Source: Marsupella aquatica (taxonomy: Eukaryota; Plantae; Marchantiophyta). From it: DNA of 64,000 nucleotides. Below are positions 1 through 42,501 of the stretch, piece by piece; the first letter of the stretch is position 1, and each line of letters begins with the position of its first letter. The stretch is from NCBI GenBank assembly GCA_973895155.1, contig OZ316899.1:953573-1017572 (forward strand), written 5' to 3'. The translations under genes were made by a program, and so were the position numbers. The notes under the pieces are model-generated. The model was not told the DNA's origin. It saw only the letters and a program-made list of their open reading frames with translations, and ran no database searches.

Positions 1-486
1 TGCCGTTCTCGAGCTGCCCTTTCTGACTCCTCGTCCTCGTAAGTCTTGATGTACTCAGTTGCCCGTTCGAACAGGCATCCCCAGAAATGTGCCGCTTGAT
101 TGACGTTGCTCATACCCTCCTTAGGTTGATCGTCGGTATCTACTCTCTCCCCGAGTGCTTGCCTAAGCAGCTGACAGTAGTTGGCCTCCCGTAGTCGTCT
201 GCCTAGTTCGTGCTCGCAAATGAGCCACCATCTCCTGCAAGCGCTCCTTACCCCTCTCCTCTGCCGGTCCTTCTTCCCGTTAATCCTTCCTAGCCGCCGA
301 CGCTTAACGCGCCATAACCCTAATCGGGTTTTCACCCTCAGCCTTACCTCCGGCCTCTGCCCGGGTTCCATGGTTGCCCCTAATTGTTTATATTTTCCTT
401 GTTTTGTCACTATACTAAGGTGTTCCTAGGGTGCCTTCCTGCTTTACCCACTTAACCGGCCGAGTGATTCCTGTCTAGGCATCACA
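1..486 (-). repeat. Partial 3' LTR of family A copy 1, including the N-terminal part of the LTR-encoded ORF (ATG at 371)
   Basis: Matches 10882..11367. Begins TGTGATGCC on the minus strand directly after the PPT and TA. Confidence 0.95.
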
Positions 487-488
487 TA

Positions 489-499
489 GCTCCCCACTT
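489..499 (-). other. Polypurine tract of family A copy 1
   Basis: Minus strand AAGTGGGGAGC-TA-TGTGATG. The same layout precedes the family B LTR (AAGTAGGGGGC-TA-TGTGGG). Confidence 0.75.
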
Positions 500-3400
500 A
501 ATTGTGAAGCGTCCTCGCGAACAACTTCATCTTCGTCCATATAGTATTTCTTGAGGCGGTCATAATGGATGCGAACTGGATATACCTCTCCCGTAATGTT
601 GGCCAATTGCACGGAGCCATTGGGGAACATCATGGTTACTCTAAAGGGTCCTAACCAGCGAGTGTAAAGCTTTCCTGGAAACCTACTATACCTACTGTCA
701 TAAAGTAGCACAAGATCACCGGTATGAATACTAACTACTTTTAACCTTTTATCATACTGCTGCTTCATGATATTCTGTCTATATTCTACTCTCTCGGCTG
801 AAATCATTCTCGCTTCCTCTAAAGCTTCTAACCTATATTCTCGCTCCTTTAGGCTCTCCTCCGCTGAGGCTCTTTCCTCAATTGTAACTTGAAATGTCGG
901 TATCTCAAGTTGCATGGGTACCAGGGCTTCTTGTCCAAAGGTTAAGAAGAAGGGTGTATGACCGGTAGTGGATTTATAGGCAAGATTGTAAGCAAAAACA
1001 GCAGCAAACAATTTATCATCCCAATCGAGTTTGTTCTGAGCTACTGTTTTGTTCAATATCTTTCCTATGATTCCGTTTGCTCGTTCTGTCAACCCGTTTG
1101 CCTTTGGATGGTAGGGAGTAGTAGGCCTATGTTTAACTAAATACTGCTCATTTAAACGACTAATTATATCATTCAAAAAATGGGTTCCTCTATCACTAAC
1201 TAATTCTAGGGGTGCTCCATACCTGGTGAAGATCTGCTCATACATGAATCTAGCCGTAGTAATTGCATCATCCTTCGTTGTTGGTCTGGCCTCTACCCAT
1301 TTAGTTGCATAATCCGTAGCCAGGATTATGTACTTGTTCCGTCGAGGGTGGGTCAGTGGTTTCAGAGGTCCAATGTAATCAATACCCCACTTCTCGAATG
1401 GTGCCAGAGGTAGAATAGGGTGCAGTGGATGCCTGGTGGACGCCCTTGGTCCTCCCGCTCGTTGACAAGGATCGCATTGTTTGATAAACTGATAGACATC
1501 TTTGTGCAAGGTGGGCCACCAGTAACCGGCATTTAATATCTTCTTAGACGTGGTTACTGGGGCAAAATGTCCTCCGGCCTCCTCTCCATGCATGGCCCGT
1601 AGGACTCGTTTTACCTCTCTCTTCTCCAAACACCTTTGAATCGTGCCGTTGATTCCATGCTTGTGCAGTATGCCTTTAATGCACTGATACTGTCTGACCT
1701 TCCGCACAAAGACTGCGGCTTGCTCTCGGCTTAATCCTGGCTGTAATCTGGAAGTGCTGAGAAATTGTAAAATCTCAGGGTACCATGTACCAGCTATTTC
1801 CACAACGAATAGCTCCTCGTCGGGGAATCGATCATCGATGCAATCCGTGGCAGGTTTACCTGTGATCCTTGAAAAGAAGTCGGCATTGGCATGTAACTTT
1901 CCTGGCTTGATCCTCAGCTCATAGTCAAACTCCTGTAATAGCAAAATCCATCTTGCTACTCTGCCTGTAAGGTCCGGCTTATTGACTAGGTACTTCAAAC
2001 TTTCATGATCAGTATGAAAGATTACCTTGTACCCTAGTAAATAATGCCTAAACTTTTTACAAGAATAAATGACTCCTAATGCTTCTCTTTCCGTGGTAGA
2101 GTAGTTCCGTTCGGCATCGGCAAGCTGACGGCTTGCGAAGTATATGGGATGGTCCCTTCTTTTCTCATCCAACTGACTTAGTACTGAGCCAATACAGAAG
2201 CCCGAGACATCTACAAAAACATGAAAATCTTTGTTCCAGTCCGGTGCTATCATGACTGGGGCCTCTACTAACATCTGCTTCAATTCTACCACCGCTGTGA
2301 CTCGTTCGGGTGTGGGTTCGAAGTCTGCTCCTGCCTTGAGCATATTGGTTAATGGTAAAGCTAGCTTGGCAAAATCCTTGATGAACCGGCGATAGTAACC
2401 AATGCATCCCAAGAAGGATCTTACATCCTTTATGTTCTTAGGTTGCATGATATCTAGCCATACTGCTAGCTTACCTTTGTCAATCTCAATGCCCTTCCTT
2501 GATACCTTGTGACCTAGTAGCACCCCCTCGGTTACTGCAAAAAAACATTTATCTGGGTGTAACTTGAGACCCACCTCCCTACATCTCATGAAGGTTTTCC
2601 TGAGGTATTTAGCATGTTTCGATGCCTTCCCGAATACTGCAAAGTCATCAATGAAGATTTCCATGAACTTTCTCAAGTAATCATGAAAAATGTTCACCAT
2701 TAATCGTTGGAACATAGCTGGTGCGTTGCAGAGTCCAAACGGCATACGATTGAAGACATAGATCCCCCATTCCGTGATGAAGGCCGTCTTGATTTGGTCT
2801 TCCTGCCGAATCCTGATTTGGTTATAACCAGAGTATCCATCCATGAATGAATATAGTTCATGACTGGCTACCATGTCTAGTACCATATCAGTAAACGGTA
2901 AAGGAAAATGGTCTTTTAATGTTGCTTCATTCAGCTTCCTGTAATCCTGACAAACCCGGATCTTGGGTTTACCATCGGGTCCAGCTTTCTTGGGAACTAT
3001 CACAATTGGAGACACCCAGTCTGAATGCAGGACTGGAGTGATGAATCCAGCTTCCACTAGTTTGTCGATTTCTGTTTTGACCAGCAGGGAATACCTCGGG
3101 TTCATCCTTCGAATTGGTTGTCGAAATGATTTGGCTCCTAACATGAGATCAATTCGATGTTCCCCTAGTGTTGGATCTACGCCCTTTAGATCTTGGTGAC
3201 TCCATGCAAACACATCCTAAAATTCAATCAATAAGTCACTGATCTCTTTCTCGAGCTCAGGTGCTAGGTTTCTCCCTAAGTTCAGTTCTCTTCCCTCTCC
3301 TAAGTCGAGCTTCCGATATTGCCGTGCTTGGATCATATTAATCTGCTTCTTCAAATTCGGGTCCAGTTCGGCTTCCAGTCTCTCTAATCTCATACCTCCA

Positions 3401-3647
3401 TAAACTGGGATCTCGGCTGGACTAGCTGAGTCGGTCCCTTCCTTGGTGTCCATAGATGGTCTCCTTACCGGTCTATTCGGTTTTGAATTAGTGGTCGGCT
3501 CCCCTTCCTGCCTTGGCTCTGGATCGTGTCTGTCCATCTCATCCACCTCTTGCTCCTGAGAGTTAGGCCGCTGTGCTCTCTCGGCTTCTAATAGGGCCTC
3601 AATTTGTTCTGCCCTCGTAATCGGCTTGTATGCCGATCCCTTGGTAT

Positions 3648-6641
3648 TTAATTCCTTGCCGATGATCGATGGCGTTGTGGACCCCGTCGGCTCTGCCACA
3701 ACGCCTGCAGAAAATCCACTGTCCCTGCTACTGCTCCCCACTTAGCCGTTTCATCCAATTGGTCTACATCCTTAACTTCCTCCGGAATTGCAGCTAAAAA
3801 GGTGGATTCTATTGTAAAGCAGTCCTCGACCTCTTCGTCTTCTTCTTCCAAGTCACCTTCCATTGGTTCTTGCCATAATCCGCTGGGGGGTACCTCTGGT
3901 CCAAAGACACCTTCTTCGGTTAGGTTAGTGAAGCATTCTAACCAACGTACTTCATCGGCTGACTCCAGTCCACTATCGTACCCATCTACTTCCCTTATGC
4001 TTTTCCTACGGTCATCCTTAGTGTCCCAGGATACCGTGATAGAGGGGGTCCCGAAAGTGAACTGCTTTTTACCCCAATCTTCTATTACCTCGACTAGGTA
4101 CAGCCATGGCCTACCAATCAATAGCCGGAATGACGTAGGATTTACCGGCTTCATTACTACATAGTTAATGCTAAAGAAGATACCTCCTATCTCTGTCTTG
4201 ATGCCGGTTAACACTCCCGTCGGAATGACCTGATATCCATTGGCCATGTTCAACACTCTTCCAGTCATCTCCGGTGTTAGACCCCACCCTTTTGCTGTTG
4301 AATCAATCATAATACATACCCCTGATCCTCCATCGATGGGTACCCGTAGTAATAATTCTCCTTGAATCATTAATGGTAATGCTGGGGCTCCTTGATCTTC
4401 TTCTATCATTAGTACGTCGGATCTGGTTGCTACCTTGGGTAATCTCGGCTTGCCGAGAATAGCCTTCCTTAATTGCTTCCGGAAGTACGGGCTATTTTTC
4501 AATAGTTGACCTACTGTTGCCGAGACTCTAGATTCTAGTACATCTTTAGCCAGGTCATAGGGAACAATCGGCTTCTCCTCTGGTGGTGTTTCCGTCTTGG
4601 ATTCGGCCAGTTTTGCCACGCTAGTCTCCACAGCTGTTGGGTCTTCCGAAGCAAACAATGCTTTTGCTCGTTTTACATCCTTGGCAATGGCTTCGGTATT
4701 CTCCAGGGTTTCTAATTCTCTTAGTTGTTCCTTAACACTAGCCGTAACAGAGGGGTAGAACAACTTAGGATGATCTCGATTGAAGTCGCTATCTTGTGAA
4801 GGATTGGTTTCAATGGTGGGCTCATGGCTTACCTGTATTGCCGGAGCCCTCCCTTCTTCTTCTGTTGATGTTGACGAAGAGTCGATCCTTTCCTTCGTAA
4901 CCTTCCCTTTATTTTTGGCCAGCCCATCCCACCTTTCCTTCCTTCTGGTAGATCGAGTAGAGACCCGGTAGCAATCATGATCTAAATCCTCCTCTGAGAA
5001 GGTTGATAGGGCTTCGGCCTCATCATCAGATGGTACGAACTCTGCCTCGGCATCCTCTTGCCATCCTAGTTCGATGTGGTTGATTTGAACTCCTCCGGGG
5101 GTAGTACCTGGCGGTAAGATCTTGATCGGCAAAAGCTTATGATTTGCGGCCAGGCCTGCCAACCAAGTAGGACATTGCCCTAGCATATGACCTTCCTGTC
5201 GGCATCCCATACATAGCTGAGCTGGTTGTCCATCACCCTGTTTGCGTGCATTCGGGTATTCTCTAGCAAAATGGCCAGGTTGACCACAATTATAGCACGC
5301 CGCAAATCTTTGCACATTCGGCCTAGGAGGTACTGACGGGTTCTGAATAATCCGAGGATACATCTCTCCTGGATTGTTCCTTAACCCTGACCACAGAGAT
5401 GCAGGTCTGTTGGATAGGTCTCGTGCTCCAGTCTCACTGATGCCGAAAACACTATCAGCGGCATCTCCCAAAAAGTACTCTACTTCTCCCTGACATGGTC
5501 TGATCTCGGCCACATGCCGAACATGATTAGTATTAAGCTTAGGACAAGCATCTTTATGGTGTCCGGTTTTATAACATAAGGCACACCATACAGAGCTATC
5601 CTCCTGTACTACCTTCTTCTTTGGTTTTACCTCTGCAATGATAGCCTTAAGTTGCTCGGTAAGGGCTACGATGTTATCTGGTGGCTTAGCCTCCATCTTG
5701 ACTTTCGTCTTCCCTCTCCTTCTGCCCTTCCTTTTCCTAGTTTTTTCTTCTTCAGAACTAGAAGATGACTCACTCTTGCTACTCCCACTATTCGAGCTTG
5801 ACTTATCACTTCTAGACTTCTTGGAATGTTTCTTCTTCTTATCTTTTTTCTTATGGGGTGATCCCTCCTCTGATGAGGAACTCTCAGACTTAAGCTGTTT
5901 CTTCCGGCTTGTGATATCTGCATTAATGTATAATTGAATATCCTTAATTGCTTCGGCTAAGGTCTCCGGGTTCTCCTTCCTAATTGCAAAACTCATCTTC
6001 TGTGGCAAAGCATTCACCAACCATTGAAGTTGCATACCTTCAGATGCATTGGTCTTTGTACGTCTTACCAGTTTCTGAAAGCGTTGCAAGAACTTCCTGA
6101 AGGATTTGTTCTCCTTGAACCGAAGTTGTCCCAACTTCAGCACTGCTAGTTCTGAAGTTCCAATGGGTCGAAACTCCTTAACAAAGAGTGTTTTGAAGAT
6201 ATCCCAGATGGCTTGATCTTCCACATCTAATGCTCTGTACCAAGGCCTAGCCTCACCCTTGAACAGGCCGGGAAGAATCTGCATCTTGATGGCCGATTCT
6301 CCATTTGCTGCAGCGGTTCCCTCGAAATCATCCAACCATTCGTCCGGATCCTCATCTCCTCTCCCATGAAATGCCTTGTAATGTATGCGCGACCGCTGGC
6401 TCAATCTGGTCCCTGGCCTCTCGTCTGGCCGTGCCTCTGGTTCCCCCATGTCGGTTGGAGACTCACTTCTCCTTACCGACTCTTCTTCTGGTATGTCTTC
6501 TTCGACGCCACTTCCAGTTTCGGAGCTACCAGCTCTTTCTGCCCCTCTCAGTCGTTGTGTATCATGCCACCCGGCGAGCTGCTGCAGTCGAGCTCTCTCC
6601 CGTTGAATCACTCTTTCTTCCCTCGGCGTAAGGTCAGTCAT
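3648..6641 (-). CDS. gag: gag-protease polyprotein (997 aa) of A copy 1
   Basis: Retrotransposon gag core (FHGRGDEDPDEWLDDF), CX2CX4HX4C knuckles and an aspartic-protease-like motif VPIDGGSG...LLIGRPWL. Confidence 0.92.
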   Translation of the reverse strand: MTDLTPREERVIQRERARLQQLAGWHDTQRLRGAERAGSSETGSGVEEDIPEEESVRRSESPTDMGEPEARPDERPGTRLSQRSRIHYKAFHGRGDEDPDEWLDDFEGTAAANGESAIKMQILPGLFKGEARPWYRALDVEDQAIWDIFKTLFVKEFRPIGTSELAVLKLGQLRFKENKSFRKFLQRFQKLVRRTKTNASEGMQLQWLVNALPQKMSFAIRKENPETLAEAIKDIQLYINADITSRKKQLKSESSSSEEGSPHKKKDKKKKHSKKSRSDKSSSNSGSSKSESSSSSEEEKTRKRKGRRRGKTKVKMEAKPPDNIVALTEQLKAIIAEVKPKKKVVQEDSSVWCALCYKTGHHKDACPKLNTNHVRHVAEIRPCQGEVEYFLGDAADSVFGISETGARDLSNRPASLWSGLRNNPGEMYPRIIQNPSVPPRPNVQRFAACYNCGQPGHFAREYPNARKQGDGQPAQLCMGCRQEGHMLGQCPTWLAGLAANHKLLPIKILPPGTTPGGVQINHIELGWQEDAEAEFVPSDDEAEALSTFSEEDLDHDCYRVSTRSTRRKERWDGLAKNKGKVTKERIDSSSTSTEEEGRAPAIQVSHEPTIETNPSQDSDFNRDHPKLFYPSVTASVKEQLRELETLENTEAIAKDVKRAKALFASEDPTAVETSVAKLAESKTETPPEEKPIVPYDLAKDVLESRVSATVGQLLKNSPYFRKQLRKAILGKPRLPKVATRSDVLMIEEDQGAPALPLMIQGELLLRVPIDGGSGVCIMIDSTAKGWGLTPEMTGRVLNMANGYQVIPTGVLTGIKTEIGGIFFSINYVVMKPVNPTSFRLLIGRPWLYLVEVIEDWGKKQFTFGTPSITVSWDTKDDRRKSIREVDGYDSGLESADEVRWLECFTNLTEEGVFGPEVPPSGLWQEPMEGDLEEEDEEVEDCFTIESTFLAAIPEEVKDVDQLDETAKWGAVAGTVDFLQALWQSRRGPQRHRSSARN
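3658..3717 (-). promoter_or_regulatory. Candidate -1 ribosomal frameshift signal (slippery G GAU UUU plus stem-loop/pseudoknot)
   Basis: Heptamer GGATTTT at 3717-3711 is in the gag phase. It is followed by a 5-nt spacer and a perfect 10-bp stem GGCGTTGTGG/CCACAACGCC (3705-3696 with 3680-3671). It lies inside the gag/pol overlap, where pol is in the -1 frame. Confidence 0.8.
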
Positions 6642-6688
6642 TACCTACGCTTCCGTTCTAACTTCATATCTCACGGCTTAAGAAATGC

Positions 6689-6706
6689 CCCCTCCATCTA
6701 GCGCCA
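6689..6706 (-). other. Primer binding site of A copy 1, probably tRNA-Asn
   Basis: TGGCGCTAGATGGAGGGG, 4 nt (TTTT) after the LTR CA. 17/18 complementary to the plant cytosolic tRNA-Asn 3' end as I recall it (CCCCTCCTTCTAGCGCCA). Confidence 0.75.
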
Positions 6707-6710
6707 AAAA

Positions 6711-9700
6711 TGTGGTGCGTCCCATGGCTCCCTAAACCCAAGAAACCCCCCAGCTCAAGCCGATTCCCGCAGGTTTCGCGCTTGGCGAGGCCGTTTCCGC
6801 GGCTTAGCGGCATGGGACGCTGCTAACCTTCTACTACTACTATTAACATTTTACACACATATACTGGACAGATCCTTCATCGGGTCATGAGATACGTAGC
6901 CGGCCTAATATAGGCCTTCCCCTGTCTTCCCCTGTCTTCCCCTCCGTCTCGTTAGGTATGTTTGGATTCCGCCGCCGGAATGATCCCCAATAGGCTTGGT
7001 TAAGCCGCTAAGACCTCTCTCAGCTCGACACATCCAACTCTCACTCCCCTGCTTACTTTCCTTCGTTCTGTTGATGTGGGCACTCTTCACACAAGTTAAT
7101 GCGACACACAAATAGCAAAATGACTCATTCTGACTGAGTCATACCATGCACTTGCCATACAAACAGTACATCTCATACACAAGTTCTGCGAACTAAGCCG
7201 TGAGGCCAACTCTATTCAGCTCTTAGGCATGAGGAAACATGAATATACACAAGGGTCACTGTATGACTAACCGAGAGCTTCTCGTACTACTTGATCCCAG
7301 CCCGGCTGGTGCAAACTAAAAACTTGCTAAAGAAGAGGCCCTGAGCTCCCCGCTGCCCAGGTACTTATCCTGGTAGTGGATCCGCCATTCTTTGCATCGT
7401 AAGCCTAATCTACTTAACAGTAATCTACTTGCCCGAATCTACCTATGTACAGCAAGGCAGGAGCACAAGTGTTGCTCCTACCAGTGGGACCGCAATCCCA
7501 CTAAGCTAAGTGTCAGGGCCGCTCCTGGTTCTGATCCTAATCCTAAACGTGGAGATCCGTGCCCGCCCTGCCCACTCACGCCTCCTCCCTCCACGTCCGC
7601 CCTCCCTAAAAGGAACGGCGCCCTTGCACCGTCACGACACCGGTGGTGGATCCTCAATGGACGCCCCCAACACTTCCTCCGCAGCCACTGCCGTTGGCCC
7701 GCCTACTGACAGATTACCTGCCCTTGACCGAGTCAACTCTCCCTCGGCCTGACTGGGTCCACCTTCGGCTTCAGCCTCGACACCGGCCTCGGCAATACCC
7801 ACGGCTTCGGCCTCAGCCACTCTCACGGCTTCGGCTTCAGCCACTCCCTCGGCTTCGGCTTCCCCTTCCCCTAGGGTAGTTGGATCCTTAGCCGTGACCC
7901 TGTCTGGGGTCGGTGCTGGGTCTACCTCCTTGATCACCACGGCCTGTGAAGTCGTATTACTCCTTGACCCTGAAGGTTTCCGCTTCTTCTTCGTTGGTGG
8001 CTCGGCAGCTGGTCCCTTCCCCTTCCCACTTACCTCCGGCACTGGTGCAGGTGGCGCGGCTTGTCCTTCGGCAATTACCACCCCTGGTAACTGGTTTGTC
8101 CCAACAGGAGATGGACCTGCTGCAGCTAAGCATTTAAATACTGCGGCTTGTTTCTTCAGCCGCTCTGTTTGGTTGTCGGCCCGCCGCTGTAGGTTCTCCA
8201 TCTTCCTCGTGATTTCCTCCAACTCCTCTTGGGTTTCATCCAGGTCCTTACGTGCCCCCTCCAGCTCGTTTTTGGCCTCCTCCTGCTCCCTGTGGGCTTC
8301 CTCCAATTCCTTCTTCAAGGTAGCCTTCTCCTCCTGGGTTGCTCTTAGCTCCTTGTCGAGCTCTGCAATGATGACAGACTCCATCTGGTTCATCTTGGCG
8401 TAAGTCTGTTCGAGCATCTCGTCCTTCTCCCTTAGGTCGGCCTTGAAGCTGGCCGTCAGGGACGCAAGCTCCTGCTGCAGCGCCATAATCCCTTGATAGG
8501 ATTTCCCTAACTCGACCTCCTTCTGCTCAAGGGCTCCACGGATTTTCTCGAGCTCCCCTTTCAACGCCCATTCCTTTCTTTGGGTCTCCGCCATGGCCCG
8601 GCTGTTGGCTGTTATGTGGGCCTCCTCTGTATTCTTCAGCTCTTGCTTCCACTTTTCCCTTTCTTTGATCGTGTCGGCCAACTCTTCCTGCGTCTGAGTC
8701 AGTTTATCCTTGATATTCTGATTATCAGCCTGCGCGGCGTCCAACTGCCCCTGCATGATGTTCAGCTCATGTCGTTTAATCCGCAGTTCATCTTGGGCTT
8801 TCTTGGCCGCCCTTAGATCTTCAATCTCGGCTTCCATCCTCCTAAGCCGCCGAATGACCTCGTCCTTCTTGCTTCTCTCTAAAGCCACCGCTTCTTCTAA
8901 TTGGTGCTTCTCCAACTGCTCCCTATGGAAAAAGGGTCCTACCTCCAACTCCTCTCCAAAGATGCCGAGCGCAAGTTCCCCACACATCTCACCATACTCC
9001 ATGGCTCTATTCTTAGCGTAGGTGGAGTAAGTAGAAGTGATCGGCATCGCCCATCGTGGCCTCTGCTCCCAAGCCGTCCTGCGGATCTCTTCAATCGTGG
9101 CTAGAGGTTTGCTTCCTTTTTCGGCTAGCCGCCTGATGTCCTCCGGCCAATCTCCTCCTGGTAAATCCTTTTCCTTAGCCAGGGCGGCCTCTTCCTCCTG
9201 CTTGATTCGCTCCTGAAATTCCTGCACCGTCTGTTTTATGCCGTCGAAGCTCGGGGGAGCAACATCTGGTGGGGGAGACTCAGGGCTACTCTGCTGGTTG
9301 GGGTCCCCTCGCACTACCCTTGGAAGTGTGGGGACAAACCGGCCACAGGTCCTTACTCCTGGAACGTGATGGTCCGACCCATAGCCGGAATTATCATGGC
9401 TGCAGTCCTCCACTGCCTCCTCTACCTCTTGGATTTCCGGCTTCTCCCTCTCCTCTTCCTCGGTAGGAGCTTCGGGCAATTCTGCCTCAGATTCGGAGCT
9501 TGAGGTTCCCACGTACATTCGAACACCTGGCTTGGATTCCGGCCTGATTCTCTCGTCTCCAGCAAAGGGGTTTTCTCTTGTGAGCCGGTGTAGGCCTACC
9601 TCTGTAGTAGTGTCCTGCATGGTTGCCGTTGCCGTTGTTGTTGCCGATGCCGATTTCTTTTCTTTCTCCAGTAGTTTCAGCAGACTCTGCATGCCTGGTT

Positions 9701-11367
9701 GCTGCATCGGCAAGTCTTCCTTCCTGGGCCTAAACACCTGCTCGATCGTAGGACTAACAGGTGGTTGAGGCTTCTCAGCCAACGGCCTCGGCGTTGGAGC
9801 TTCCTCGGGTGCCCTTACCTGCAGGGGAAGTACCGGGGCAAAAGTCTGACCTCTGGCATACCGGCACAACAGCGGCATGTGATAGCCAAGCCGCGACACG
9901 CTCCCCATGCCGATTACCTGCTGCTCCTCCTTTAAGATCTTCTTCAATTGGTTGAGGAGGTACCCGTTGTAGTCCCGGCTTGGGTCTGGCCTTTCTGCCA
10001 GATAGACCTGTGCCTTGCCGATCTCTGCCCTCGGCAAGTTACAATGCATGGTCACCCGCAAGAAGTCGATCATCTCTCCTATGTGCGGGTTGGTGCAGGT
10101 GTTCCGGAAGAAGCCATTCTTCGTTGATGGCCCGGGGAACGACCGGAACTCCTTGTCAGGCAAGGTCTTCCTGGTATCAACTTTGGTCTTATTGCCCATC
10201 GGCAAGCCAAACACTTCGGCAATCACCTTGGGAGTAAGATAGAAATCCTTCCCATATATCCTCGTGCAATTGGTCTCGGGTTCCCATGACCCCACGAATT
10301 CTAATAGGTCTGACTCCGGTACCTCCGGCTTCAGCCATGGTAATCTTACAAAGGCCTCCAAGCCGGATCCGGCCATGAAGCCTTGGTACTTCTTGGTCTG
10401 CATGGCCGTAAAGCATGCATCCTCCTCCCGTGCAAAATGTAGTTGCACCTCCACCGGTAGGGTTGCCGCCCAGCCCTTCCAGGTGTCATCCCTGGTTGGA
10501 ATGGCCTTGATGGGATCGACCTCCTCCTCTTCGGCTTCTCCCTGCCTCCTGCTCTGCTGCTCGGCTGGCTTCTTTGGTGCCGTCGACCTCGTTCTTTTTG
10601 CCGGGGTGGCTTCATCGTTGACGGCTCCCTTCCTCTTCATCTCTGCTGCCGTGGAGGTTTCTCCTAGCACCGTTGCCTGGGTCCACCTTTCCGTGCTACC
10701 CTTTAATTCCCAGTGTATGTCGTTGCAGTTCTTGATGGCCTCTCGGATGCCGACGACGCTGTCCTTGCAAAACAGAAGATCGTCGAGTTGATTGGAAGTA
10801 GGCGTCCACAGGAACTCGTCCTTGATGAGTTCGCCTCCTAAGAAAGCCGTCTTCTGCAGCTCCCACAATCGAGCGAGCTCCTGCCGTTCTCGAGCTGCCC
10901 TTTCTGACTCCTCGTCCTCGTAAGTCTTGATGTACTCAGTTGCCCGTTCGAACAGGCATCCCCAGAAATGTGCCGCTTGATTGACGTTGCTCATACCCTC
11001 CTTAGGTTGATCGTCGGTATCTACTCTCTCCCCGAGTGCTTGCCTAAGCAGCTGACAGTAGTTGGCCTCCCGTAGTCGTCTGCCTAGTTCGTGCTCGCAA
11101 ATGAGCCACCATCTCCTGCAAGCGCTCCTTACCCCTCTCCTCTGCCGGTCCTTCTTCCCGTTAATCCTTCCTAGCCGCCGACGCTTAACGCGCCATAACC
11201 CTAATCGGGTTTTCACCCTCAGCCTTACCTCCGGCCTCTGCCCGGGTTCCATGGTTGCCCCTAATTGTTTATATTTTCCTTGTTTTGTCACTATACTAAG
11301 GTGTTCCTAGGGTGCCTTCCTGCTTTACCCACTTAACCGGCCGAGTGATTCCTGTCTAGGCATCACA
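6711..11367 (-). repeat. 5' LTR of A copy 1, 4657 bp
   Basis: TG...CA termini (TGTGATGCC...GCACCACA), adjacent to the PBS. Same length and termini as both LTRs of copy 2. Confidence 0.95.
7632..11252 (-). CDS. LTR-encoded accessory protein, 1206 aa from the first ATG (basic N-terminus, conserved globular domain, long coiled coil, Ala/Glu-rich tail)
   Basis: Uninterrupted ORF entirely inside the LTR; ATG in strong context ACCATGG. The track start at 11291 is GTG. Homologous reading frames are kept in the diverged LTRs at 17220-18322 and 62565-63687. Confidence 0.88.
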   Translation of the reverse strand: MEPGQRPEVRLRVKTRLGLWRVKRRRLGRINGKKDRQRRGVRSACRRWWLICEHELGRRLREANYCQLLRQALGERVDTDDQPKEGMSNVNQAAHFWGCLFERATEYIKTYEDEESERAARERQELARLWELQKTAFLGGELIKDEFLWTPTSNQLDDLLFCKDSVVGIREAIKNCNDIHWELKGSTERWTQATVLGETSTAAEMKRKGAVNDEATPAKRTRSTAPKKPAEQQSRRQGEAEEEEVDPIKAIPTRDDTWKGWAATLPVEVQLHFAREEDACFTAMQTKKYQGFMAGSGLEAFVRLPWLKPEVPESDLLEFVGSWEPETNCTRIYGKDFYLTPKVIAEVFGLPMGNKTKVDTRKTLPDKEFRSFPGPSTKNGFFRNTCTNPHIGEMIDFLRVTMHCNLPRAEIGKAQVYLAERPDPSRDYNGYLLNQLKKILKEEQQVIGMGSVSRLGYHMPLLCRYARGQTFAPVLPLQVRAPEEAPTPRPLAEKPQPPVSPTIEQVFRPRKEDLPMQQPGMQSLLKLLEKEKKSASATTTATATMQDTTTEVGLHRLTRENPFAGDERIRPESKPGVRMYVGTSSSESEAELPEAPTEEEEREKPEIQEVEEAVEDCSHDNSGYGSDHHVPGVRTCGRFVPTLPRVVRGDPNQQSSPESPPPDVAPPSFDGIKQTVQEFQERIKQEEEAALAKEKDLPGGDWPEDIRRLAEKGSKPLATIEEIRRTAWEQRPRWAMPITSTYSTYAKNRAMEYGEMCGELALGIFGEELEVGPFFHREQLEKHQLEEAVALERSKKDEVIRRLRRMEAEIEDLRAAKKAQDELRIKRHELNIMQGQLDAAQADNQNIKDKLTQTQEELADTIKEREKWKQELKNTEEAHITANSRAMAETQRKEWALKGELEKIRGALEQKEVELGKSYQGIMALQQELASLTASFKADLREKDEMLEQTYAKMNQMESVIIAELDKELRATQEEKATLKKELEEAHREQEEAKNELEGARKDLDETQEELEEITRKMENLQRRADNQTERLKKQAAVFKCLAAAGPSPVGTNQLPGVVIAEGQAAPPAPVPEVSGKGKGPAAEPPTKKKRKPSGSRSNTTSQAVVIKEVDPAPTPDRVTAKDPTTLGEGEAEAEGVAEAEAVRVAEAEAVGIAEAGVEAEAEGGPSQAEGELTRSRAGNLSVGGPTAVAAEEVLGASIEDPPPVS

Positions 11368-11785
11368 GGTTAGGTTTTTGTATGGTGTTTGCTAGGTAGG
11401 TTATTTTGCAATGCACTATGCACAGTGTGAGACCGTGCATCCAAAAGGTATGATGCCCCATCCATTTATTCCTTGATCCTTTAGGCTATTTCAGGTTTGG
11501 CATGCAAGTTTTTATCATATGTGCTTGAGCTTGTTTTCGGCAATTGTAGATCATGCATGCTCATTATGAAAATGTCCACCTTGTAGAGATTCTGGATATC
11601 CCCACACTTTGTGTGTAGAGAATACGGCCTAGTAGGCACGGCAGAGCGCGGGTATCATTGAGGTATAGCAAGTGTTGTATATATGTCTCTCATTCAATTG
11701 TTTTTCTAGACATAAATATTTGTCTTGCTGGTTTTTTTCTTTCATCCAACATATTGTCATGGTTGTATGATATATATGCAGATCG

Positions 11786-13090
11786 ATGTCTGCTTCTGAT
11801 AGTTCCACGTCGGATTCAGACTCAGACACGAGCTCGTCTGAGGAGGAGGTTCCTCCACCCCCTCCTCCAGACCAACCTCGTGCTTGGCCACTAGGGTCCA
11901 TACCTTGTTGGTGTGTGAGATGTAAGGGACTTGTGGTTCGACATGCCTGGTAGACTTGTGAGCACATCGAGAACTATGGTCACCACGAGGGTGATACACC
12001 AGGGTATTTGCCTAGCCAGGTAATAAATACGTCCCTCCTTCATTCCATGAAATTCCAATAATTAGTCCACAAATGCTAAATTACTTTACATCTAAACAAC
12101 AATTCATGTATTGATTTGTGTCAAATCATTGTTTGTTGAAATAGGTGCCTCGTAGACCCCCACCTCCTCTGGTTGATAATGCTATGTGGTTGGAAGGGTT
12201 TCTAGCAAGGGCTCGTGAGTTGCTTGCATCTGCCCTTGCCCATCCACCTCTTAGTCCCCCTGCTCCTATCCCCACACATGTGCATGTAGACGAGGATGCA
12301 CCGGTCTCTCGACCCGAGGAAATGGATACTAGGGTCCTACGTACACGTTCACGGTCTCGCAGACGTAGACGACAATATGAACCGGTGGAGGAGGTAGAGC
12401 ATCGGGAGGAGGCGTTACGTAGTGATCGACCACCCGGAAATGGAGATTATATTTGTGTTGAGGGCCGGTTTGGACTATCTTATCTCACTGGTAGGGCTGC
12501 TGATGTTTGGAAGGACTTTTCTCCTAGTCTCTTCAAATTTCCAGATTTCATTCATACTGATGAACCAGTTGACATATGGGGGTCGGCCTTGGATAGTGAA
12601 GGCATCCTCTATTGGTGCTGATATAGGATATGGTCTATATGCTTTGGAGGACATTGTGGTCCCTCCAAAGCCATGGAGATGTGGATATGATGGAGAGCAC
12701 CTTTTCCCTTACATTGGGGCTGTATATAATGCAAAGAGTTGGAAGACTTTGTTGCGTCAGCATCCAAGCTGGGGGGTGTACGCCTTGAGGATGGACTCAG
12801 ACCCAGATGAGGTTTTGACTAGGCCGTGGCATTGTAGGATGATTGATGGTGACCCTATTTGGAATGGTAATTTAGCAGGGTACATCAATAGTACAACGGG
12901 TAGAGGTAGAGATTTTGAGGCTAATGTAGAGTGGATCCAAATTTTTGGCCCTCCTAGAGATTCATATTTTGTGAAACATATGGATGACCATATCATGACA
13001 GTAGCCATTAGGACTATTAGAGCCGGTGAGGAGATATTGTGTGAGTATGAGTGGGACGCCCCAAAATTGTCCCTACGTTGCGGTCCATGA
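11786..13090 (+). pseudogene. Two-exon SET-domain (lysine methyltransferase-like) gene inside CACTA-1: exon 1 11786..12019, exon 2 12145..13090
   Basis: Exon 1 is MSASDSSTSDSDS...CWCVRC...H..YGH with a TAG at 11951. An AT-rich GT-AG intron 12020..12144 joins in frame. There is a frameshift near 12568. SET motifs: VKASSIG..GYGLYA, PYIG, NLAGYINS, ANVEW, AIRTIRAGEEILCEY. Confidence 0.8.
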
Positions 13091-13151
13091 TAGTATGTTG
13101 GACTTACATGCATGTAAATCTTACATTGAATTAATGAGATTCATGATGATT

Positions 13152-13170
13152 TATATATATATATATATAT
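13152..13170. repeat. (TA)n microsatellite in the putative intron 13093..13224
   Basis: TATATATATATATATATAT read directly from the sequence. Confidence 0.9.
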
Positions 13171-13224
13171 TGATGATTGTAATGAGATTAATGTTAATGA
13201 GATTGCATTGATGTTGTATGATAG

Positions 13225-16200
13225 AACCAATATGTACAATCTGATATTGGGGTCATATCACGAGCTATGCGACAACACATTGTTGAGGCCATGGTGGCCA
13301 ACCATGGGCATGATGAAGGGATGCAGGAGGATGATGTACAACATGAGGGTGATAATCCTACTCAAGCACATCTGGATGAGGAGAGGGCCATGGATGAGCT
13401 CATGGACCAATTTTATGATGATGATGTTGATATTGGTATGGAGGATATGGGTACAACTGATGACAACACCACTCATCCAGGACCTTCTAGGGGGGGACAA
13501 AACAAGGATTGGGAGGAGGCTCAACGTCATGCTCGTACTCGCATATTTGAGGGTAGCACCTTATCTCGGCTCTCCGCAATAATGTTGTTGCTGAATGTGC
13601 AGCAAAGACATGGGGCCAGCAACCTACTTTTGGATGATGTTTTGCGTACCTTGCATGATCGTATTTTGCCACCAGGCAATACCATGCCAGCCTCTTGGAA
13701 GGAGGCAAAACAAGTGTTGAAGTCCATTGGCCTCAAGTATGTAGTGATACATGCATGTGTGAATGATTGCATTATTTTTAGGGGGGAGCATGAGAATGCA
13801 ACTGCATGTCCTAAGTGTGAGAAGCCTCGTTACCGTGATGACATGTTGACAGGGAAGGTGCCTCAAAAGGTTATGCGATACTTTCCTCTCATCCCCCGAT
13901 TGCGACATCAGTACCGTTGTGCAGAGTTAGCTGAGTACATGGTATGGCACTCAAAGAATCGTTCTGATATGGCTACGAACTCTAGTGCCATGCGGATGAT
14001 GGTTGACCCTCCTACCAATCAATTTGTTGAGGGCAGATGGGGGGAGTTCAGCACTAAACCACAACATGTTCGACTTGGCTTGGCAGCTGATGGTATCAGC
14101 CCTTTTGCATTGGCGGGTAAAGCAAAACCATATTCAGTATGGCCAGTAGTTTTGACTAACTACAATATCCCTCCATGGATGGCCATGAAGAAAGGTCATT
14201 TACTGCTCTCCATGATCATCCCGGGTCCTAAGCAAGTAAAAAAGATTGACATCTACTTGCAACCATTGATTGATGAGCTTTTGCAATTGTGGAGAGGAGT
14301 GGATTGTTATGACGGACGTCGCAATACAGGAGGTGTACCTCGCGCGTTTACCCTCAAGGCCATCCTTATGTGGACCATGCATGACCTACCAGGTATGACC
14401 TGATAAACCTTGGCTTATTTCCTTGATGTACTACCTTAAATTTAGTGTGCATTAACCTTATTTCATAATTGGCTGGTTGTATATGGGCTTGGTACAGGGT
14501 TTGGGTATATCTCTGGATTGCAAACATCAGGCTATCGAGCTTGCCCTTCATGCGGACCGGATTTGGAGGGAGTGGCAAGACGCAAGTCAAGTACTTTGCG
14601 TAAGATAGTTTACATTGGTCATACCAAATATCTTCCAGCAGACCATCCTTGGAGGAGTGATCATTTCTTGTATGACACTGATGAGGGCCAACCTGATACT
14701 TGTCCTCAACCTCAGTGAAAGGATCCAACATATTGGAGAGAGGTATGGGAGAGAGTTCAAGACCCCGATGATCCATTACAGTTTCTCCAATGTGGCATGA
14801 CCCGTTTATCTGCATTGTCACAGTTGCCATATTGGTCAGAGATGCCCATTAATCACTTGTTGGATGCAATGCACATTGAGGGAAATGTGGGGAGATCATT
14901 GATTCGTCATCTATATGGGGAGAAGAACCACAACTGGAGAGAAAGTTGTGAGGAGATGGGGATGCATGGTCTTTTGGGTTTTTGGCCATCTTTGGACCCC
15001 CCTGGTGATCCCCCTAGCATCCATCCTCCTTGGGTTTTGACCAGGGCAGAGCGCATAGAGTTTCGCAGACGGATTGGGTCAATGAGGTTTCCCACAGGTT
15101 ATGGTGCCAATCTTCGTAAGGCATTTGGGGGGGATGATTCTCCAAAATGGCCATCGTACCTGAAAACACATGATTATCATCGGTTACTAGAACATGTCAT
15201 TCCAGTTGCGATTATTGGATTGGGTAGTGAGGAACTTCGTGATGCTCTTTGGTCATTGGGCAAGTTTTTGAGATGGGTATGTCAGAAGGAGGTACCAGAG
15301 GATGACATTGCTGCGATGGAGATATTTGGAGTAGAGGTTGTTTGCAAGTTGGAGAAGGCACTTCCACCCTCATTCTTTGATGGTCAGGTTCATTTCCTCA
15401 TACATTTAGTGCGTGAGGTAGCAATTGCAGGCCCGGTACATTGTCGATGGATGTATTGGGTAGAGCGTTACATGGGGGTGATGAAGTCATATGTCTCTAA
15501 TCGGGCTAGGGTGGAAGGTAGCATTGCAGAGCGTCATCTTGGAGCAGAGAGTATGTTTTATTGTACAAACATAGTTGCCACACTAGATCCAAGGGCACCT
15601 AGGGGATGGATAGATGAGGCGGCACGAGAGGTAGACTATGAGGATGATAGACTCACTGGGGCATCAGGAGAGCGTGGCTTAGGCTCAGTAGAGCGTTTGC
15701 AACTTACAACATTTATGTTGTATAACTCACCAGAGGTTGTAGGGGAGTGGACGACATTTTATGAGGAGGAGAAGCAAAATAGTTGACGGCCACGGTTGTT
15801 TCCCAAGTTTCACCCATACATGAAATCAAAGTTGTTAGAAGTGGATGCCTTGGTGGGTACCGGAGATAGTATATTACATTACCCACAAGTGACTGATAAG
15901 CTTCGTACCTTAGTTCATGGTCCACTGCTTAAAGTCACGACTCGGACGGCACTGTGGTCAAAGGGGAGACATTTCCGTGTGGAACGACTTGATGAGAAGA
16001 GAGCAGCTACACAAGATTGTGGGGTGATGGGTTGGTTCACCCAGGATTCCCAGAGTAGCACGTCGGACATGAACCCCATTCGCTCCACCGTGGCCCATTA
16101 TGGGAAGATTGATGAGATCCTGACAGTGAAATACCATGCACATACTACTTTGGAGGAGGTGGTATTTAAGTGCAAATGGTTCAAGATGAATCTTGTAGGC

Positions 16201-16466
16201 AACAATCAAACATGTGAAGATGATGCGTGCGGATTTACCCGTTTGAAGACATCTGCAAATAGTGTCATTAGTTCCAATTGGAGGTCCTCAGATCCCTTTG
16301 CCTTCCCACATCACCTTGAGCAGTGCTTTTACCTACCCTATCCAGATGACCCACATTGGTCCATTGTCATGCCTTATATCCTAGATCACGGTCTATAGTC
16401 CAAAAGAGACCCAATGTCGTTGTAGTGGAAGACAACGACATCCCCGACCCTCCACAAGCTAGTTAG
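13225..16466 (+). pseudogene. CACTA TnpD/Tnp2-type transposase with an intron (14393..14497), in-frame TGA at 14716 and 15784, and a probable frameshift near 16380
   Basis: Motifs HACVNDC, CPKC, RYFPLIPRL, LAADGISPF, WPVVLTNYNIPPW, YLQPLIDEL. Splicing restores HDLPG|FGYISG. Later motifs SFFDGQVHFLIHL, RWMYWVER, FKCKWF, DPFAFP. The ORFs at 14518, 14797 and 15796 share one frame. Confidence 0.9.
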
Positions 16467-31900: not shown

Positions 31901-32174
31901 CCGGTCTATTCGGTTTTGAATTAGTGGTCGGCTCCCCTTCCTGCCTTGGCTCTGGATCGTGTCTGTCCATCTCATCCACCTCTTGCTCCTGAGAGTTAGG
32001 CCGCTGTGCTCTCTCGGCTTCTAATAGGGCCTCAATTTGTTCTGCCCTCGTAATCGGCTTGTATGCCGATCCCTTGGTATTTAATTCCTTGCCGATGATC
32101 GATGGCGTTGTGGACCACGTCGGCTCTGCCACAACGCCTGCAGAAAATCCACTGTCCCTGCTACTGCTCCCCAC
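28908..32174 (-). pseudogene. pol: pol of A copy 2, one premature TGA at 31554-31556
   Basis: Same RT/RH/INT motifs as copy 1. CGA in copy 1 is TGA here, and the codon broken in copy 1 is an intact CAG here. Confidence 0.93.
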
Positions 32175-35074: not shown

Positions 35075-35121
35075 TACCTACGCTTCCGTTCTAACTTCAT
35101 ATCTCACGGCTTAAGAAATGC

Positions 35122-35139
35122 CCCCTCCATCTAGCGCCA
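35122..35139 (-). other. Primer binding site of A copy 2 (tRNA-Asn-like)
   Basis: TGGCGCTAGATGGAGGGG, 4 nt after the LTR end at 35144. Confidence 0.75.
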
Positions 35140-35143
35140 AAAA

Positions 35144-42300: not shown

Positions 42301-42501
42301 CCCTCCTATAGTAACTTGCTTACCCCTAGATAACTTTGCATAACTAAAATTCCCTCTTACCTCTACTAAGCTTCCCTTCTTACTTAAGTGCCCTAAACCT
42401 AGCTACTCTGATAGCACTAAAACTTTTTCCCTAACTATTTCCTCTTCTAAACGAAAGAATGTCATGTTTCTCTACACTAGCTGACACTGAGCCATCCCAC
42501 A
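39337..42501 (-). repeat. 3' LTR of B, 3165 bp; includes an imperfect ~179-bp internal duplication (~39610..39970) and a CAG/AGC-rich tract (~41030..41580)
   Basis: TG...CA termini. Direct repeat of 48665..51829 (offset 9328). Confidence 0.95.

What the first reader, a model, noticed from the sequence alone, without database searches (positions are those of the whole stretch)
11786..13090. CACTA transposon carrying a SET-domain lysine-methyltransferase-like gene
Seen: between the element interior and the TnpD core, on the same strand, lies a spliced gene with an acidic Ser-rich start, a CxCxxC..H motif, a Pro-rich linker, an Arg-rich NLS-like run (RTRSRSRRRRR) and a SET domain. The SET motifs are GYGLYA, YIG, GYINS (for RFINHS) and GEEILCEY with the conserved Tyr. 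Established: SET domains methylate lysines, often on histones. CACTA elements are known to capture genes and SETMAR is a SET-mariner fusion, but I do not know a described SET-bearing CACTA family. Inference: a transposon-encoded chromatin writer that could counter silencing or mark targets. This copy is damaged (one stop, one frameshift).
Basis: partly seen in the sequence, partly recalled or inferred. Interest (0 to 1): 0.9.

Follow-up and report, generated by a model that had tools for sequence, protein, structure and literature searches.

The report
Liverwort CACTA transposon encoding SET methyltransferase
A family of cut-and-paste (CACTA) transposons in liverworts carries its own conserved SET-domain lysine-methyltransferase gene inside the transposase gene, apparently sharing the transposase's first exon. 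The copy in this window is a dead one.

Summary
Window 11786-13090 (+) is a two-exon gene, with exon 1 at 11786-12019, a GT-AG intron at 12020-12144, and a SET exon at 12145-13090. It lies directly upstream of a CACTA TnpD transposase (Transposase_21, DUF4218, DUF4216).

- **SET domain is real.** Pfam SET scores 26.7 bits against a cut-off of 22.4. A high-confidence AlphaFold model of the 75%-identical Calypogeia fissa homolog (pLDDT 90.6) matches only SET histone methyltransferases.
- **Not a one-off capture.** The SET-then-TnpD arrangement recurs in 8 independent loci, including C. fissa and Riccia sorocarpa. The SET core has dN/dS of about 0.17-0.21, against 0.09-0.13 for TnpD, while the intron and spacer are unconserved. 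SET and TnpD identities co-vary (Mantel r=0.90).
- **This copy is dead.** The stop at 11951 and the extra G at 12578-12582 are missing from nearly all other copies sampled in four public read sets. TnpD carries two CGA>TGA stops.
- **New here.** Exon 1 is the transposase's own Transpos_assoc zinc finger (hhalign 95.5%, E 1.6e-8). The TnpD body starts at a conserved phase-0 acceptor (13225) without a conserved ATG. One exon 1 can therefore splice to either SET or TnpD. This is inferred from comparison only; I found no RNA evidence.

Activity and substrate are untested. The scan's first readers noted three more copies in this genome.

The parts
11628..11665 (+). Conserved non-coding block about 120 nt upstream of the ATG. 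It may be promoter or 5' UTR.
   Evidence: 89% identical over 38 nt to C. fissa locus L001 9689-9726, while the surrounding sequence is unalignable.
11786..12019 (+). Exon 1: acidic Ser-rich leader plus a CxCxxC...H zinc finger (11906-11992). It is inferred to be shared by the SET mRNA and the transposase mRNA. It carries a TAG at 11951-11953 that none of the other copies sampled shows.
   Evidence: The peptide is conserved in L001, L002, L003 and L011. hhalign against Transpos_assoc N-termini of CACTA transposases gives probability 95.5%, E 1.6e-8. All other contigs in 4 runs read G at 11951, giving GAG.
12020..12144 (+). Intron between exon 1 and the SET exon (GT-AG, phase 0, 125 nt).
   Evidence: Donor CAG|gta and acceptor aatag|GTG are conserved in the window, L001, L002 and L003, with introns of 122-130 nt. 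Intron sequence is only 44% identical to L001. The junction is used in annotated protein P0001.
12145..13090 (+). SET exon: Pro-rich linker, basic run (12340-12375), N-flank hairpin (12463-12519), SET core (about 12584-13054) and stop TGA (13088-13090). An extra G in the run 12578-12582 causes the frameshift.
   Evidence: Pfam SET 26.7 bits. Homologs P0001-P0008. Nearly all other copies lack the extra base. dN/dS is 0.17-0.21. Motif conservation is shown.
13091..13224 (+). AT-rich unconserved spacer between the SET stop and the transposase acceptor. It may hold the SET mRNA 3' end.
   Evidence: 52% identity to L001. Spacer length varies among loci (134, 158, 225 and 143 nt), and the SET and TnpD frames have no fixed relation.
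13225..14392 (+). First exon of the TnpD body (acidic region plus the N-part of Transposase_21). It begins at the conserved acceptor tAG|AAC CAA.
   Evidence: Pfam Transposase_21, E 3e-37. The frame opens exactly at the acceptor in the window, L001 and L002. The window's ATG at 13267 is Ile in L002.
14491..16398 (+). Second TnpD exon (rest of Transposase_21, DUF4218, DUF4216). It carries in-frame TGA codons at 14716-14718 and 15784-15786. The exact acceptor, near 14498, is inferred.
   Evidence: Pfam DUF4218 and DUF4216. A single-frame tblastn match to the L003 transposase covers 14491-16380. Nearly all other copies read CGA at 14716 and all at 15784.
52350..55900 (.). Arrays of direct repeats with periods of about 705 nt and 124 nt. 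They are candidate subterminal repeats of the CACTA element.
   Evidence: Assignment to the same element as the SET gene is inferred.
56197..56215 (-). Candidate 3' terminal inverted repeat (CACTAGAAGAAAACCTGTG read on the minus strand).
   Evidence: The 5' end lies outside the window, so the pair and the target-site duplication could not be checked.
1..11367 (-). Ty3-type LTR retrotransposon abutting or interrupting the CACTA element on its 5' side. Its LTR is at 6711-11367.
   Evidence: Self-comparison; Pfam RT, RNase H, integrase and gag.
24263..52298 (-). Further nested LTR retrotransposons. One, at 39337-51829, has identical 3165-bp LTRs and a 5-bp duplication.

Best explanation
Window 11786-13090 is a dead copy of an integral accessory gene of a liverwort CACTA/EnSpm transposon lineage.

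**Architecture.**
- The transposase gene's first exon encodes an acidic leader and the Transpos_assoc-type zinc finger.
- A roughly 315-codon exon lodged in the transposase's first intron encodes a Pro-rich linker, a basic NLS-like run and a divergent SET domain. It ends in its own stop.
- Splicing exon 1 to this exon gives a zinc-finger-SET protein of about 390 aa.
- Skipping it joins exon 1 in phase to the TnpD body at 13225 and gives the transposase.
- One promoter would therefore yield a transposase and a lysine methyltransferase with the same N-terminal finger.

**Proposed mechanism (inferred).** The SET protein is a SAM-dependent lysine methyltransferase. Its shared finger brings it to the same DNA or partner as the transposase. 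There it methylates a histone tail or a component of the transposition complex and so modulates the element's chromatin state or activity. Whether this acts against silencing or as self-restraint is unknown.

**What is shown and what is inferred.**
- Shown: the SET fold and motifs, family-wide linkage, purifying selection, co-divergence, exon-1 homology, and conserved splice sites and phases.
- Inferred: actual alternative splicing, enzymatic activity, substrate and biological effect.
For: **SET identity.**
- Pfam scores are above the cut-off in the window and in most homologs tested.
- A profile of 49 family members hits the solved SET protein LegAS4 (5czy/8sr6) at E 4e-6 over the whole domain.
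- The AlphaFold model of P0001:120-344 has pLDDT 90.6. Its top 50 Foldseek PDB hits are all SET methyltransferases at probability 1.0.
- Across the 49 sequences, the GxG glycines are kept in 46 and 48, the YxG Tyr in 48, the Asn of the NHS motif in 45, the Asn of PN in 49, the Glu of GEE in 49, and the catalytic Tyr in 48.

**Family-wide linkage.**
- SET lies immediately upstream of Transposase_21, DUF4218 and DUF4216 on the same strand in the window, L001 (C. fissa), L002, L003-5, L007, L008 and L010 (Riccia sorocarpa), and L011.
- The species identity of GCA_046195345.1 comes from PMC11923412.

**Selection.**
- SET core dN/dS is 0.17 (window vs L001) and 0.21 (window vs L002). TnpD gives 0.13 and 0.09.
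- The intron is 44% identical and the spacer 52% identical.

**Co-divergence.** Pairwise SET and TnpD identities correlate (r=0.90, Mantel p about 0.001), and the trees are broadly congruent.

**Lesions missing from the other copies.** At 11951 every contig laid from the four public read sets reads G. The extra G at 12578 is absent from all contigs of three runs and most of the fourth.

**Shared exon.**
- hhalign of exon-1 peptides against Transpos_assoc gives probability 95.5%, E 1.6e-8.
- More distant TnpD relatives carry Transpos_assoc contiguously and have no SET (L012; Pfam columns).
- The fern protein P0206 has the same kind of finger fused directly to TnpD.
- Donor, SET acceptor and TnpD acceptor are all phase 0 and conserved in 3-4 loci. 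The TnpD exon has no conserved ATG.
Against: - **No RNA evidence.** The four public runs that hold the sequence behave as DNA: their contigs carry the intron and no GT-AG joints were seen. No spliced exon1-TnpD product was found.
- **Missing His.** The His of the canonical NHS motif is replaced (YINS[T/S]) throughout the family. Activity therefore cannot be assumed, although LegAS4, which is reported to be active, also lacks it (YINFS).
- **Weak finger signal in Pfam.** Pfam itself does not call Transpos_assoc on exon 1.
- **Alternative starts.** The window and L001 have a Met shortly after the TnpD acceptor that could serve as an independent start.
- **Saturation.** dS is about 1 or higher, so dN/dS values are approximate.
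- **Element ends unresolved.** The 5' end lies outside the window, and no homology to other loci extends beyond 16433.
Confidence: 0.65

Rival explanations
1. The SET domain is catalytically inert. The zinc-finger-SET protein acts as a truncated-transposase-type regulator. It shares the transposase's N-terminal finger and so competes for the same sites or partners, with the SET fold serving only as a scaffold or reader.
For: The canonical His of NHS is absent in all 49 members. There is no post-SET zinc cluster, and the protein ends 10-15 residues after the catalytic Tyr. The shared N-terminal finger is the arrangement expected of a competitor.
Against: The residues that make up the SAM pocket and catalytic centre are nearly invariant over a deep family: GxG, Asn, Asn of PN, Glu, and Tyr in 48/49. 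This is not expected for a mere scaffold. LegAS4 has the same His-less motif and is reported to be an active enzyme (my own knowledge).
Confidence: 0.17
2. SET and TnpD are two independent genes with separate starts. Exon 1 belongs only to the SET gene, and the transposase starts at an internal Met downstream of 13225.
For: The window (ATG 13267) and L001 have a Met near the start of the TnpD ORF. The C. fissa annotation calls a TnpD protein starting there (P0179). No exon1-TnpD transcript was seen.
Against: That Met is Ile in L002. Protein conservation (NQ[FY]V..D..V..RA) extends upstream of it to an AG acceptor in three loci. Without exon 1 the transposase would lack the Transpos_assoc finger that its more distant relatives carry contiguously.
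Confidence: 0.12
4. This is a passive one-off capture of a host SET gene fragment, decaying neutrally in this element.
For: The window copy is broken. A stand-alone intronless paralog exists among host genes in C. fissa (P0076, L013).
Against: There are eight linked loci in at least two liverwort classes, dN/dS of about 0.2, co-divergence with TnpD, and lesions missing from nearly all other copies sampled. The host-like paralog is only about 32% identical.
Confidence: 0.02

Closest known systems
HarbingerS DNA transposons (Kojima & Jurka 2014, Repbase Reports; cited in PMC12730594 ref 9 and in bioRxiv 10.1101/2025.02.11.637652)
   Same: A cut-and-paste DNA transposon family that encodes a SET-domain protein as an accessory gene.
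   Different: It belongs to a different superfamily (PIF/Harbinger DDE transposase, not Transposase_21/CACTA). I could not read the primary report, so gene architecture and SET relatedness are not compared.
Plavaka accessory gene 2 (PAG2) of the red alga Bostrychia moritziana (bioRxiv 10.1101/2025.02.11.637652)
   Same: An accessory gene with a SET domain in giant elements assigned to the EnSpm/CACTA superfamily in the broad sense.
   Different: PAG2 combines a DNA methylase domain (PF01555) with SET, sits in Plavaka elements of a red alga, and is one of three accessory genes. Here the SET exon sits inside a canonical plant TnpD gene and appears to share its zinc-finger exon.
En/Spm (maize) TnpA/TnpD alternative splicing (my own knowledge, not checked here)
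   Same: A single CACTA transcription unit gives two proteins by alternative splicing with a common first exon.
   Different: In En/Spm the second product is the DNA-binding TnpA, not a SET protein. Splicing here is inferred from conserved sites only.
SETMAR (primate SET-mariner fusion; my own knowledge)
   Same: A SET domain and a transposase are linked in one locus.
   Different: SETMAR is a host gene that captured a transposase and makes an in-frame fusion. Here the transposon carries the SET gene, a conserved stop separates SET from the transposase, and the element is multi-copy.
VANC anti-silencing proteins of VANDAL (Mutator-like) elements (Hosaka et al. 2017, cited in PMC12730594)
   Same: A transposon-encoded accessory protein proposed or shown to act on the element's own chromatin.
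   Different: VANC is not a SET protein and acts through DNA hypomethylation. No function is shown for the liverwort SET protein.
Legionella LegAS4/RomA SET domain (PDB 5czy, 8sr6/8swi)
   Same: It is the best solved sequence relative of the family profile (E 4e-6) and among the top structural matches. It shares the His-less YINxS variant of the NHS motif.
   Different: It is a bacterial secreted protein with ankyrin repeats and only about 22% identity. There is no evidence of direct descent.

Membership tests
SET domain (PF00856) lysine methyltransferases | Profile match above the curated threshold | tested here: met
   The window ORF scores 26.7 bits against a cut-off of 22.4. P0001 scores 34.1 and P0043 scores 35.6; some divergent members fall just below at 18-21.6 bits.
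SET domain (PF00856) lysine methyltransferases | SET beta-fold | tested here: met
   The AlphaFold model of the 75%-identical homolog has pLDDT 90.6 and pTM 0.87. Foldseek PDB hits are SETD8, LegAS4, MLL1, NSD1, EHMT1 and DIM-5 at probability 1.0, with TM by target 0.58-0.73. The window's own broken protein was not modelled.
SET domain (PF00856) lysine methyltransferases | GxG SAM-binding motif, YxG, and the ELxF/YDY catalytic Tyr | tested here: met
   The window has GYGLYA, PYIGAVY and GEEILCEY. Across the family these are kept in 46-49 of 49 sequences.
SET domain (PF00856) lysine methyltransferases | NHS(C)xxPN motif with Asn-His | tested here: inconclusive
   Asn is kept in 45/49 and the PN Asn in 49/49, but His is replaced by Ser in 48/49 (YINS[T/S]). 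LegAS4 shows the same variant (YINFS).
SET domain (PF00856) lysine methyltransferases | SAM-dependent lysine methylation | not testable with these tools
   This needs a biochemical assay.
CACTA / EnSpm superfamily | TnpD-type transposase (Transpos_assoc, Transposase_21, DUF4218, DUF4216) | tested here: met
   Pfam hits. Transpos_assoc is detected only by profile-profile comparison of exon 1.
CACTA / EnSpm superfamily | CACTA...TAGTG terminal inverted repeats, 3-bp target duplication, subterminal repeats | tested here: inconclusive
   There is a candidate 3' end, CACTAGAAGAAAA (reverse strand), at 56203-56215 and repeat arrays at 52350-55900. The 5' end lies outside the window, and no matching TIR was found in other loci.
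HarbingerS | PIF/Harbinger transposase | tested here: not met
   The linked transposase is Transposase_21/CACTA in all 8 loci.
SETMAR-like SET-transposase fusion | SET and transposase in one reading frame or protein | tested here: not met
   There is a conserved stop after SET, an unconserved spacer of variable length, and no fixed frame relation.

The most novel reading that the evidence does not exclude
A land-plant transposon lineage makes a functional histone (or transposase-complex) lysine methyltransferase from the transposase gene by alternative splicing. The shared zinc finger aims it at the element's own ends or insertion targets. The transposon would then write its own chromatin state, either to escape H3K9/H3K27-based silencing or to limit itself. 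This arrangement would have been kept since before the split of leafy and complex-thalloid liverworts, with a related high-copy SET module in ferns.
Probability: 0.35. Interest if true: 0.85.

Novelty: new variant of a known kind. Interest (0 to 1): 0.72.

Why it matters
Transposon-encoded chromatin modifiers are rare, and few have a tested function. The known examples include VANC, TET/JBP genes in fungal elements, HarbingerS SET and Plavaka PAG genes.

Here a SET gene is an old, selected part of a canonical plant CACTA element. It is wired into the transposase gene so that both products would carry the same zinc finger. That suggests a concrete, testable way for a transposon to aim a histone-modifying enzyme at itself.

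Liverworts silence transposons with both H3K9 and H3K27 methylation, as discussed in PMC11982613. An element-borne lysine methyltransferase would bear directly on how that system is evaded or exploited.

The finding also bears on annotation. These SET proteins appear as ordinary 'SET domain-containing' host genes in liverwort and fern gene sets.

Tried and rejected
- **Single-sequence PDB search:** phmmer of the window ORF against PDB sequences gave only noise. The family profile was needed.
- **First AlphaFold run:** the run with 12 sequences on full-length P0001 was unusable (pLDDT 50.6). The 49-sequence core alignment worked.
- **Transpos_assoc in Pfam:** Pfam at E up to 5 did not detect it in exon-1-bearing proteins. 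Only profile-profile comparison did.
- **RNA evidence:** both run searches returned the same four runs of unknown kind. Laying their contigs showed intron-containing, DNA-like sequence and no GT-AG joints at the predicted junctions. The listed joints (such as 11665>11785, 12023>12128 and 14397>14495) have non-canonical ends, and I read them as length variants among copies.
- **Fern context:** the genomic context of the Adiantum SET copies could not be fetched.
- **Element ends:** a TIR search in the other loci and a search for homology beyond 16433 or in 52299-56400 found nothing. The L011 database was not built for that last script, so its blank means nothing.
- **Rejected readings:** chance ORF, one-off capture, and in-frame SET-TnpD fusion.
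- **Origin of the SET domain:** this could not be traced. Only 141 representatives among 1.84 billion proteins match the family profile at E up to 1e-3, and canonical host SET families are not among the strong hits.
Full report
**Layout of the window.**
- Self-comparison and Pfam scans show three blocks.
  - 1-11367 is a Ty3-type LTR retrotransposon on the minus strand, with a 4.66-kb LTR at 6711-11367.
  - 24263-52298 holds further nested LTR retrotransposons.
  - 11368-24262 lies between them.
- The first 5 kb of that middle stretch carries, on the plus strand, the finding and then a CACTA TnpD transposase.
  - Transposase_21 lies in 13267-14403 (E 3e-37).
  - DUF4218 lies in 14797-15786 and DUF4216 in 15796-16398.
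- A candidate 3' terminus and subterminal repeat arrays lie beyond the nested retroelements.
  - The terminus reads CACTAGAAGAAAA on the minus strand at 56203-56215.
  - The repeat arrays span 52350-55900.
  - The 5' terminus is outside the window, so the element's ends are not established.

**The observation.**
  - ATG at 11786 and an acidic Ser-rich leader.
  - CWCVRCKG...EHIENYGHHEG at 11906-11992.
  - A GT-AG, phase-0 intron at 12020-12144.
  - A Pro-rich stretch and RTRSRSRRRRRQ at 12340-12375.
  - The SET motifs GYGLYA, PYIGAVY, GNLAGYINST and GEEILCEY.
- The 12422-13087 ORF hits Pfam SET at 26.7 bits, above the 22.4 cut-off.
- The copy has one in-frame TAG (11951-11953) and one frameshift.
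- Homologs read ...VE(I/V)WGRPWIVKASS... across the shift.
- The window has five G at 12578-12582 where four are needed.

**It is a real SET domain.**
- A search of 5.8 billion proteins found eight relatives.
  - The best is an annotated Calypogeia fissa (leafy liverwort) protein, P0001, at 75% identity.
  - Its gene model uses the same exon-1/SET-exon junction.
- A profile search of 1.84 billion representatives found only 141 matches at E up to 1e-3 (42 at 1e-30). This is a small, discrete clade, set apart from the host SET families.
- A 49-sequence profile matches the solved SET protein LegAS4 over the whole domain (E 4e-6) and, more weakly, EZH2, MLL and SETD8.
- The AlphaFold model of P0001:120-344 built on that alignment is confident (pLDDT 90.6, pTM 0.87).
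- Its best 50 Foldseek PDB matches are all SET lysine methyltransferases at probability 1.0.
- Conservation across the 49 sequences is high at the key positions.

| Position | Kept in (of 49) |
|---|---|
| GxG glycines | 46 and 48 |
| YxG Tyr | 48 |
| Asn of the NHS motif | 45 |
| Asn of PN | 49 |
| Glu of GEE | 49 |
| Catalytic Tyr | 48 |

- The one departure is that the His of NHS is Ser throughout (YINS[T/S]). LegAS4 has the same type of variant (YINFS).

**It belongs to the transposon family, not to this copy.** The order SET, then Transposase_21, DUF4218 and DUF4216, on one strand, recurs in these loci:

| Locus | Source | Evidence |
|---|---|---|
| L001 | C. fissa; collinear with the window over 11785-16432 at 71-79% nucleotide identity | |
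| L002 | JGI metagenome contig | |
| L003-L005 | Logan contigs of three of four related runs (L006 holds the SET ORF only) | |
| L007 | degraded copy | |
| L008, L010 | two divergent copies in GCA_046195345.1, which PMC11923412 identifies as Riccia sorocarpa, a complex thalloid liverwort | |
| L011 | ENA assembly | |

- L009 has a contiguous zinc-finger-SET ORF followed by an acidic ORF, and its contig ends there.
- A more distant TnpD (L012, about 40% identical) has Transpos_assoc contiguous with Transposase_21 and no SET.

**Selection and co-inheritance.**
- For the SET core, dN/dS (Nei-Gojobori) is 0.17 between the window and L001 (dN 0.18, dS 1.07). It is 0.21 against L002.
- The first TnpD exon gives 0.13 and 0.09.
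- The less conserved N-terminal part of the SET exon gives about 0.3.
- The intron (44% identity) and the SET-TnpD spacer (52%) are essentially unconserved.
- dS is near saturation, so these ratios are approximate.
- Across the eight loci that carry both genes, pairwise SET and TnpD identities correlate (r = 0.90, Mantel p about 0.001). The two trees share the same main groupings.
- This fits one old acquisition followed by joint descent.

**This copy is dead, but the family consensus is not.**
- Contigs from four public runs, from two coded organisms, were laid on 11400-16400. The family is highly repeated there.
- At 11951 every other contig reads G, turning TAG into GAG (Glu), as in C. fissa.
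- The extra base at 12578 is absent from all contigs of three runs and most of the fourth.
- The window's TnpD also has two in-frame TGA codons (14716, 15784). Nearly all other copies read CGA at 14716 and all at 15784.
- Many of the window's departures from the other copies are C-to-T, a pattern expected of a methylated, silenced copy (inference).

**New point: exon 1 is the transposase's own first exon.**
- The exon-1 peptide is conserved in L001, L002, L003 and L011.
  - The pattern is an acidic Ser-rich leader, then C.C..C.G, a 9-10-residue gap, (E/V)HI..(Y/W/V)G.H, allowing for L003's and L011's substitutions.
  - The cysteine-histidine finger also occurs at the N-terminus of Riccia SET proteins.
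- An alignment of these peptides matches the Transpos_assoc N-termini of 21 CACTA transposases by hhalign at 95.5% probability, E 1.6e-8, with identical spacing.
- The closest TnpD relatives lack that domain in their ORFs, while more distant ones carry it contiguously.
- A fern transposase (P0206) has the same type of finger fused directly to the TnpD body.
- Conserved coding of the TnpD body begins exactly at an AG acceptor in three loci (tAG|AAC CAA: window 13225, L001 11316, L002 1876).
- The window's ATG at 13267 is Ile in L002.
- The donor after exon 1 and both acceptors are phase 0, and their sequences are conserved.
- The SET exon therefore sits in the transposase's first intron. Exon 1 can be joined in frame either to it or to the TnpD body.
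- I could not obtain RNA evidence. The available runs look like DNA, and no canonical junction was seen. Alternative splicing is a well-supported inference, not an observation.

**What it most likely does.**
- The conserved SAM-pocket and catalytic residues argue for an active methyltransferase.
- The basic run suggests nuclear import.
- The shared finger suggests that the enzyme goes where the transposase goes.
- The structural neighbours are too diverse to name a substrate. SETD8 modifies H4K20; LegAS4 and MLL1 modify H3K4.
- Whether the effect is anti-silencing, target marking or self-limitation is open.
- Rivals are listed in the rival explanations: an inert SET acting as a competitor through the shared finger, two independent genes, and an in-frame fusion. 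The conserved stop and the variable spacer speak against a fusion.

**Comparison with what is known.**
- Full-text searches found no report of a SET gene in plant CACTA elements or in liverwort transposons.
- They did find precedents in other groups.
  - HarbingerS elements encode a SET protein.
  - Helitrons have captured SET genes.
  - Plavaka elements, assigned to EnSpm/CACTA in the broad sense, carry an accessory gene with DNA-methylase and SET domains in the red alga Bostrychia.
- I therefore rate this a new variant of a known kind. What is new is the host lineage (land plants), the canonical CACTA backbone, and the apparent sharing of the transposase's zinc-finger exon.
- Earlier first-reader notes of this scan record three more copies in the same genome and the cassette-exon idea. 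I tested the latter by comparison as described above.

**Limits.**
"Liverwort" rests on the nearest named relatives.
- Copy number cannot be read from contig word depth.
- Element boundaries are unresolved.
- Activity, substrate and splicing all need experiments.

Noticed in passing
L013 (C. fissa CBCUJL010000019.1), gene at 10001-11512; proteins P0076 and P0178: This is a stand-alone, intronless 503/506-aa paralog of the family. It has a Cys-rich N-terminal region plus a YINS-type SET domain. It sits between ordinary host genes (mL59, FtsH) with no transposase within 10 kb, and has two near-identical copies on different contigs. It may be a domesticated copy or the ancestral host gene.
   Followed up: partly
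Adiantum nelumboides proteins P0156, P0305-P0311 (no DNA available): A nearly identical SET module of about 165 aa, a distant branch of the same family (E about 1e-38 to the profile), forms the C-terminus of many gene models. Their N-termini are unrelated (gag/zf-CCHC, integrase SH3 and others). A related hit, P0320, pairs a weaker match (E 3.5e-28) with a reverse transcriptase domain. This suggests a high-copy, probably transposon-borne SET exon in a fern.
   Followed up: partly
window 17223-19220: A 2-kb stretch is 82% identical, in inverted orientation, to part of the 4.66-kb LTR (6711-8731) of the neighbouring retrotransposons. It includes a coiled-coil ORF (17567-18322) related to the LTR-encoded 1219-aa ORF. 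It may be an older LTR fragment or a sequence shared between the elements.
   Followed up: no
window 14716-14718, 15784-15786 and many sites in 11885-16208: Both TnpD stops are TGA where other copies read CGA. Many of the other well-supported differences from the family, about a third of those listed, are likewise T in the window where the other copies read C. This is a CpG-deamination-like signature, consistent with a methylated, silenced copy.
   Followed up: partly
window 11628-11665 and 11665>11785: A 38-nt block upstream of the ATG is 89% identical to the C. fissa copy amid unalignable sequence. Contigs in two runs join 11665 directly to 11785, skipping 119 nt with non-canonical ends. This is unexplained: it could be a length variant among copies or an unusual 5' UTR intron.
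   Followed up: no
window 39337-51829: An LTR retrotransposon with 100% identical 3165-bp LTRs and a 5-bp target duplication is inserted into the LTR of another element. Its 2022-aa gag-pol ORF is intact. It looks like a very recent insertion.
   Followed up: no
L001 9862-10090 (C. fissa copy): The C. fissa copy nearest to the window has a frameshift in the acidic leader of exon 1. This is why its annotated protein starts at an internal Met (MVVHQAW...), so that copy is not fully intact either.
   Followed up: partly
proteins P0072, P0086, P0096: These automatic gene models fuse parts of the SET exon to TnpD sequence. They are probably annotation artefacts of the nested gene arrangement, but they are the only hint of a possible fusion isoform.
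   Followed up: no
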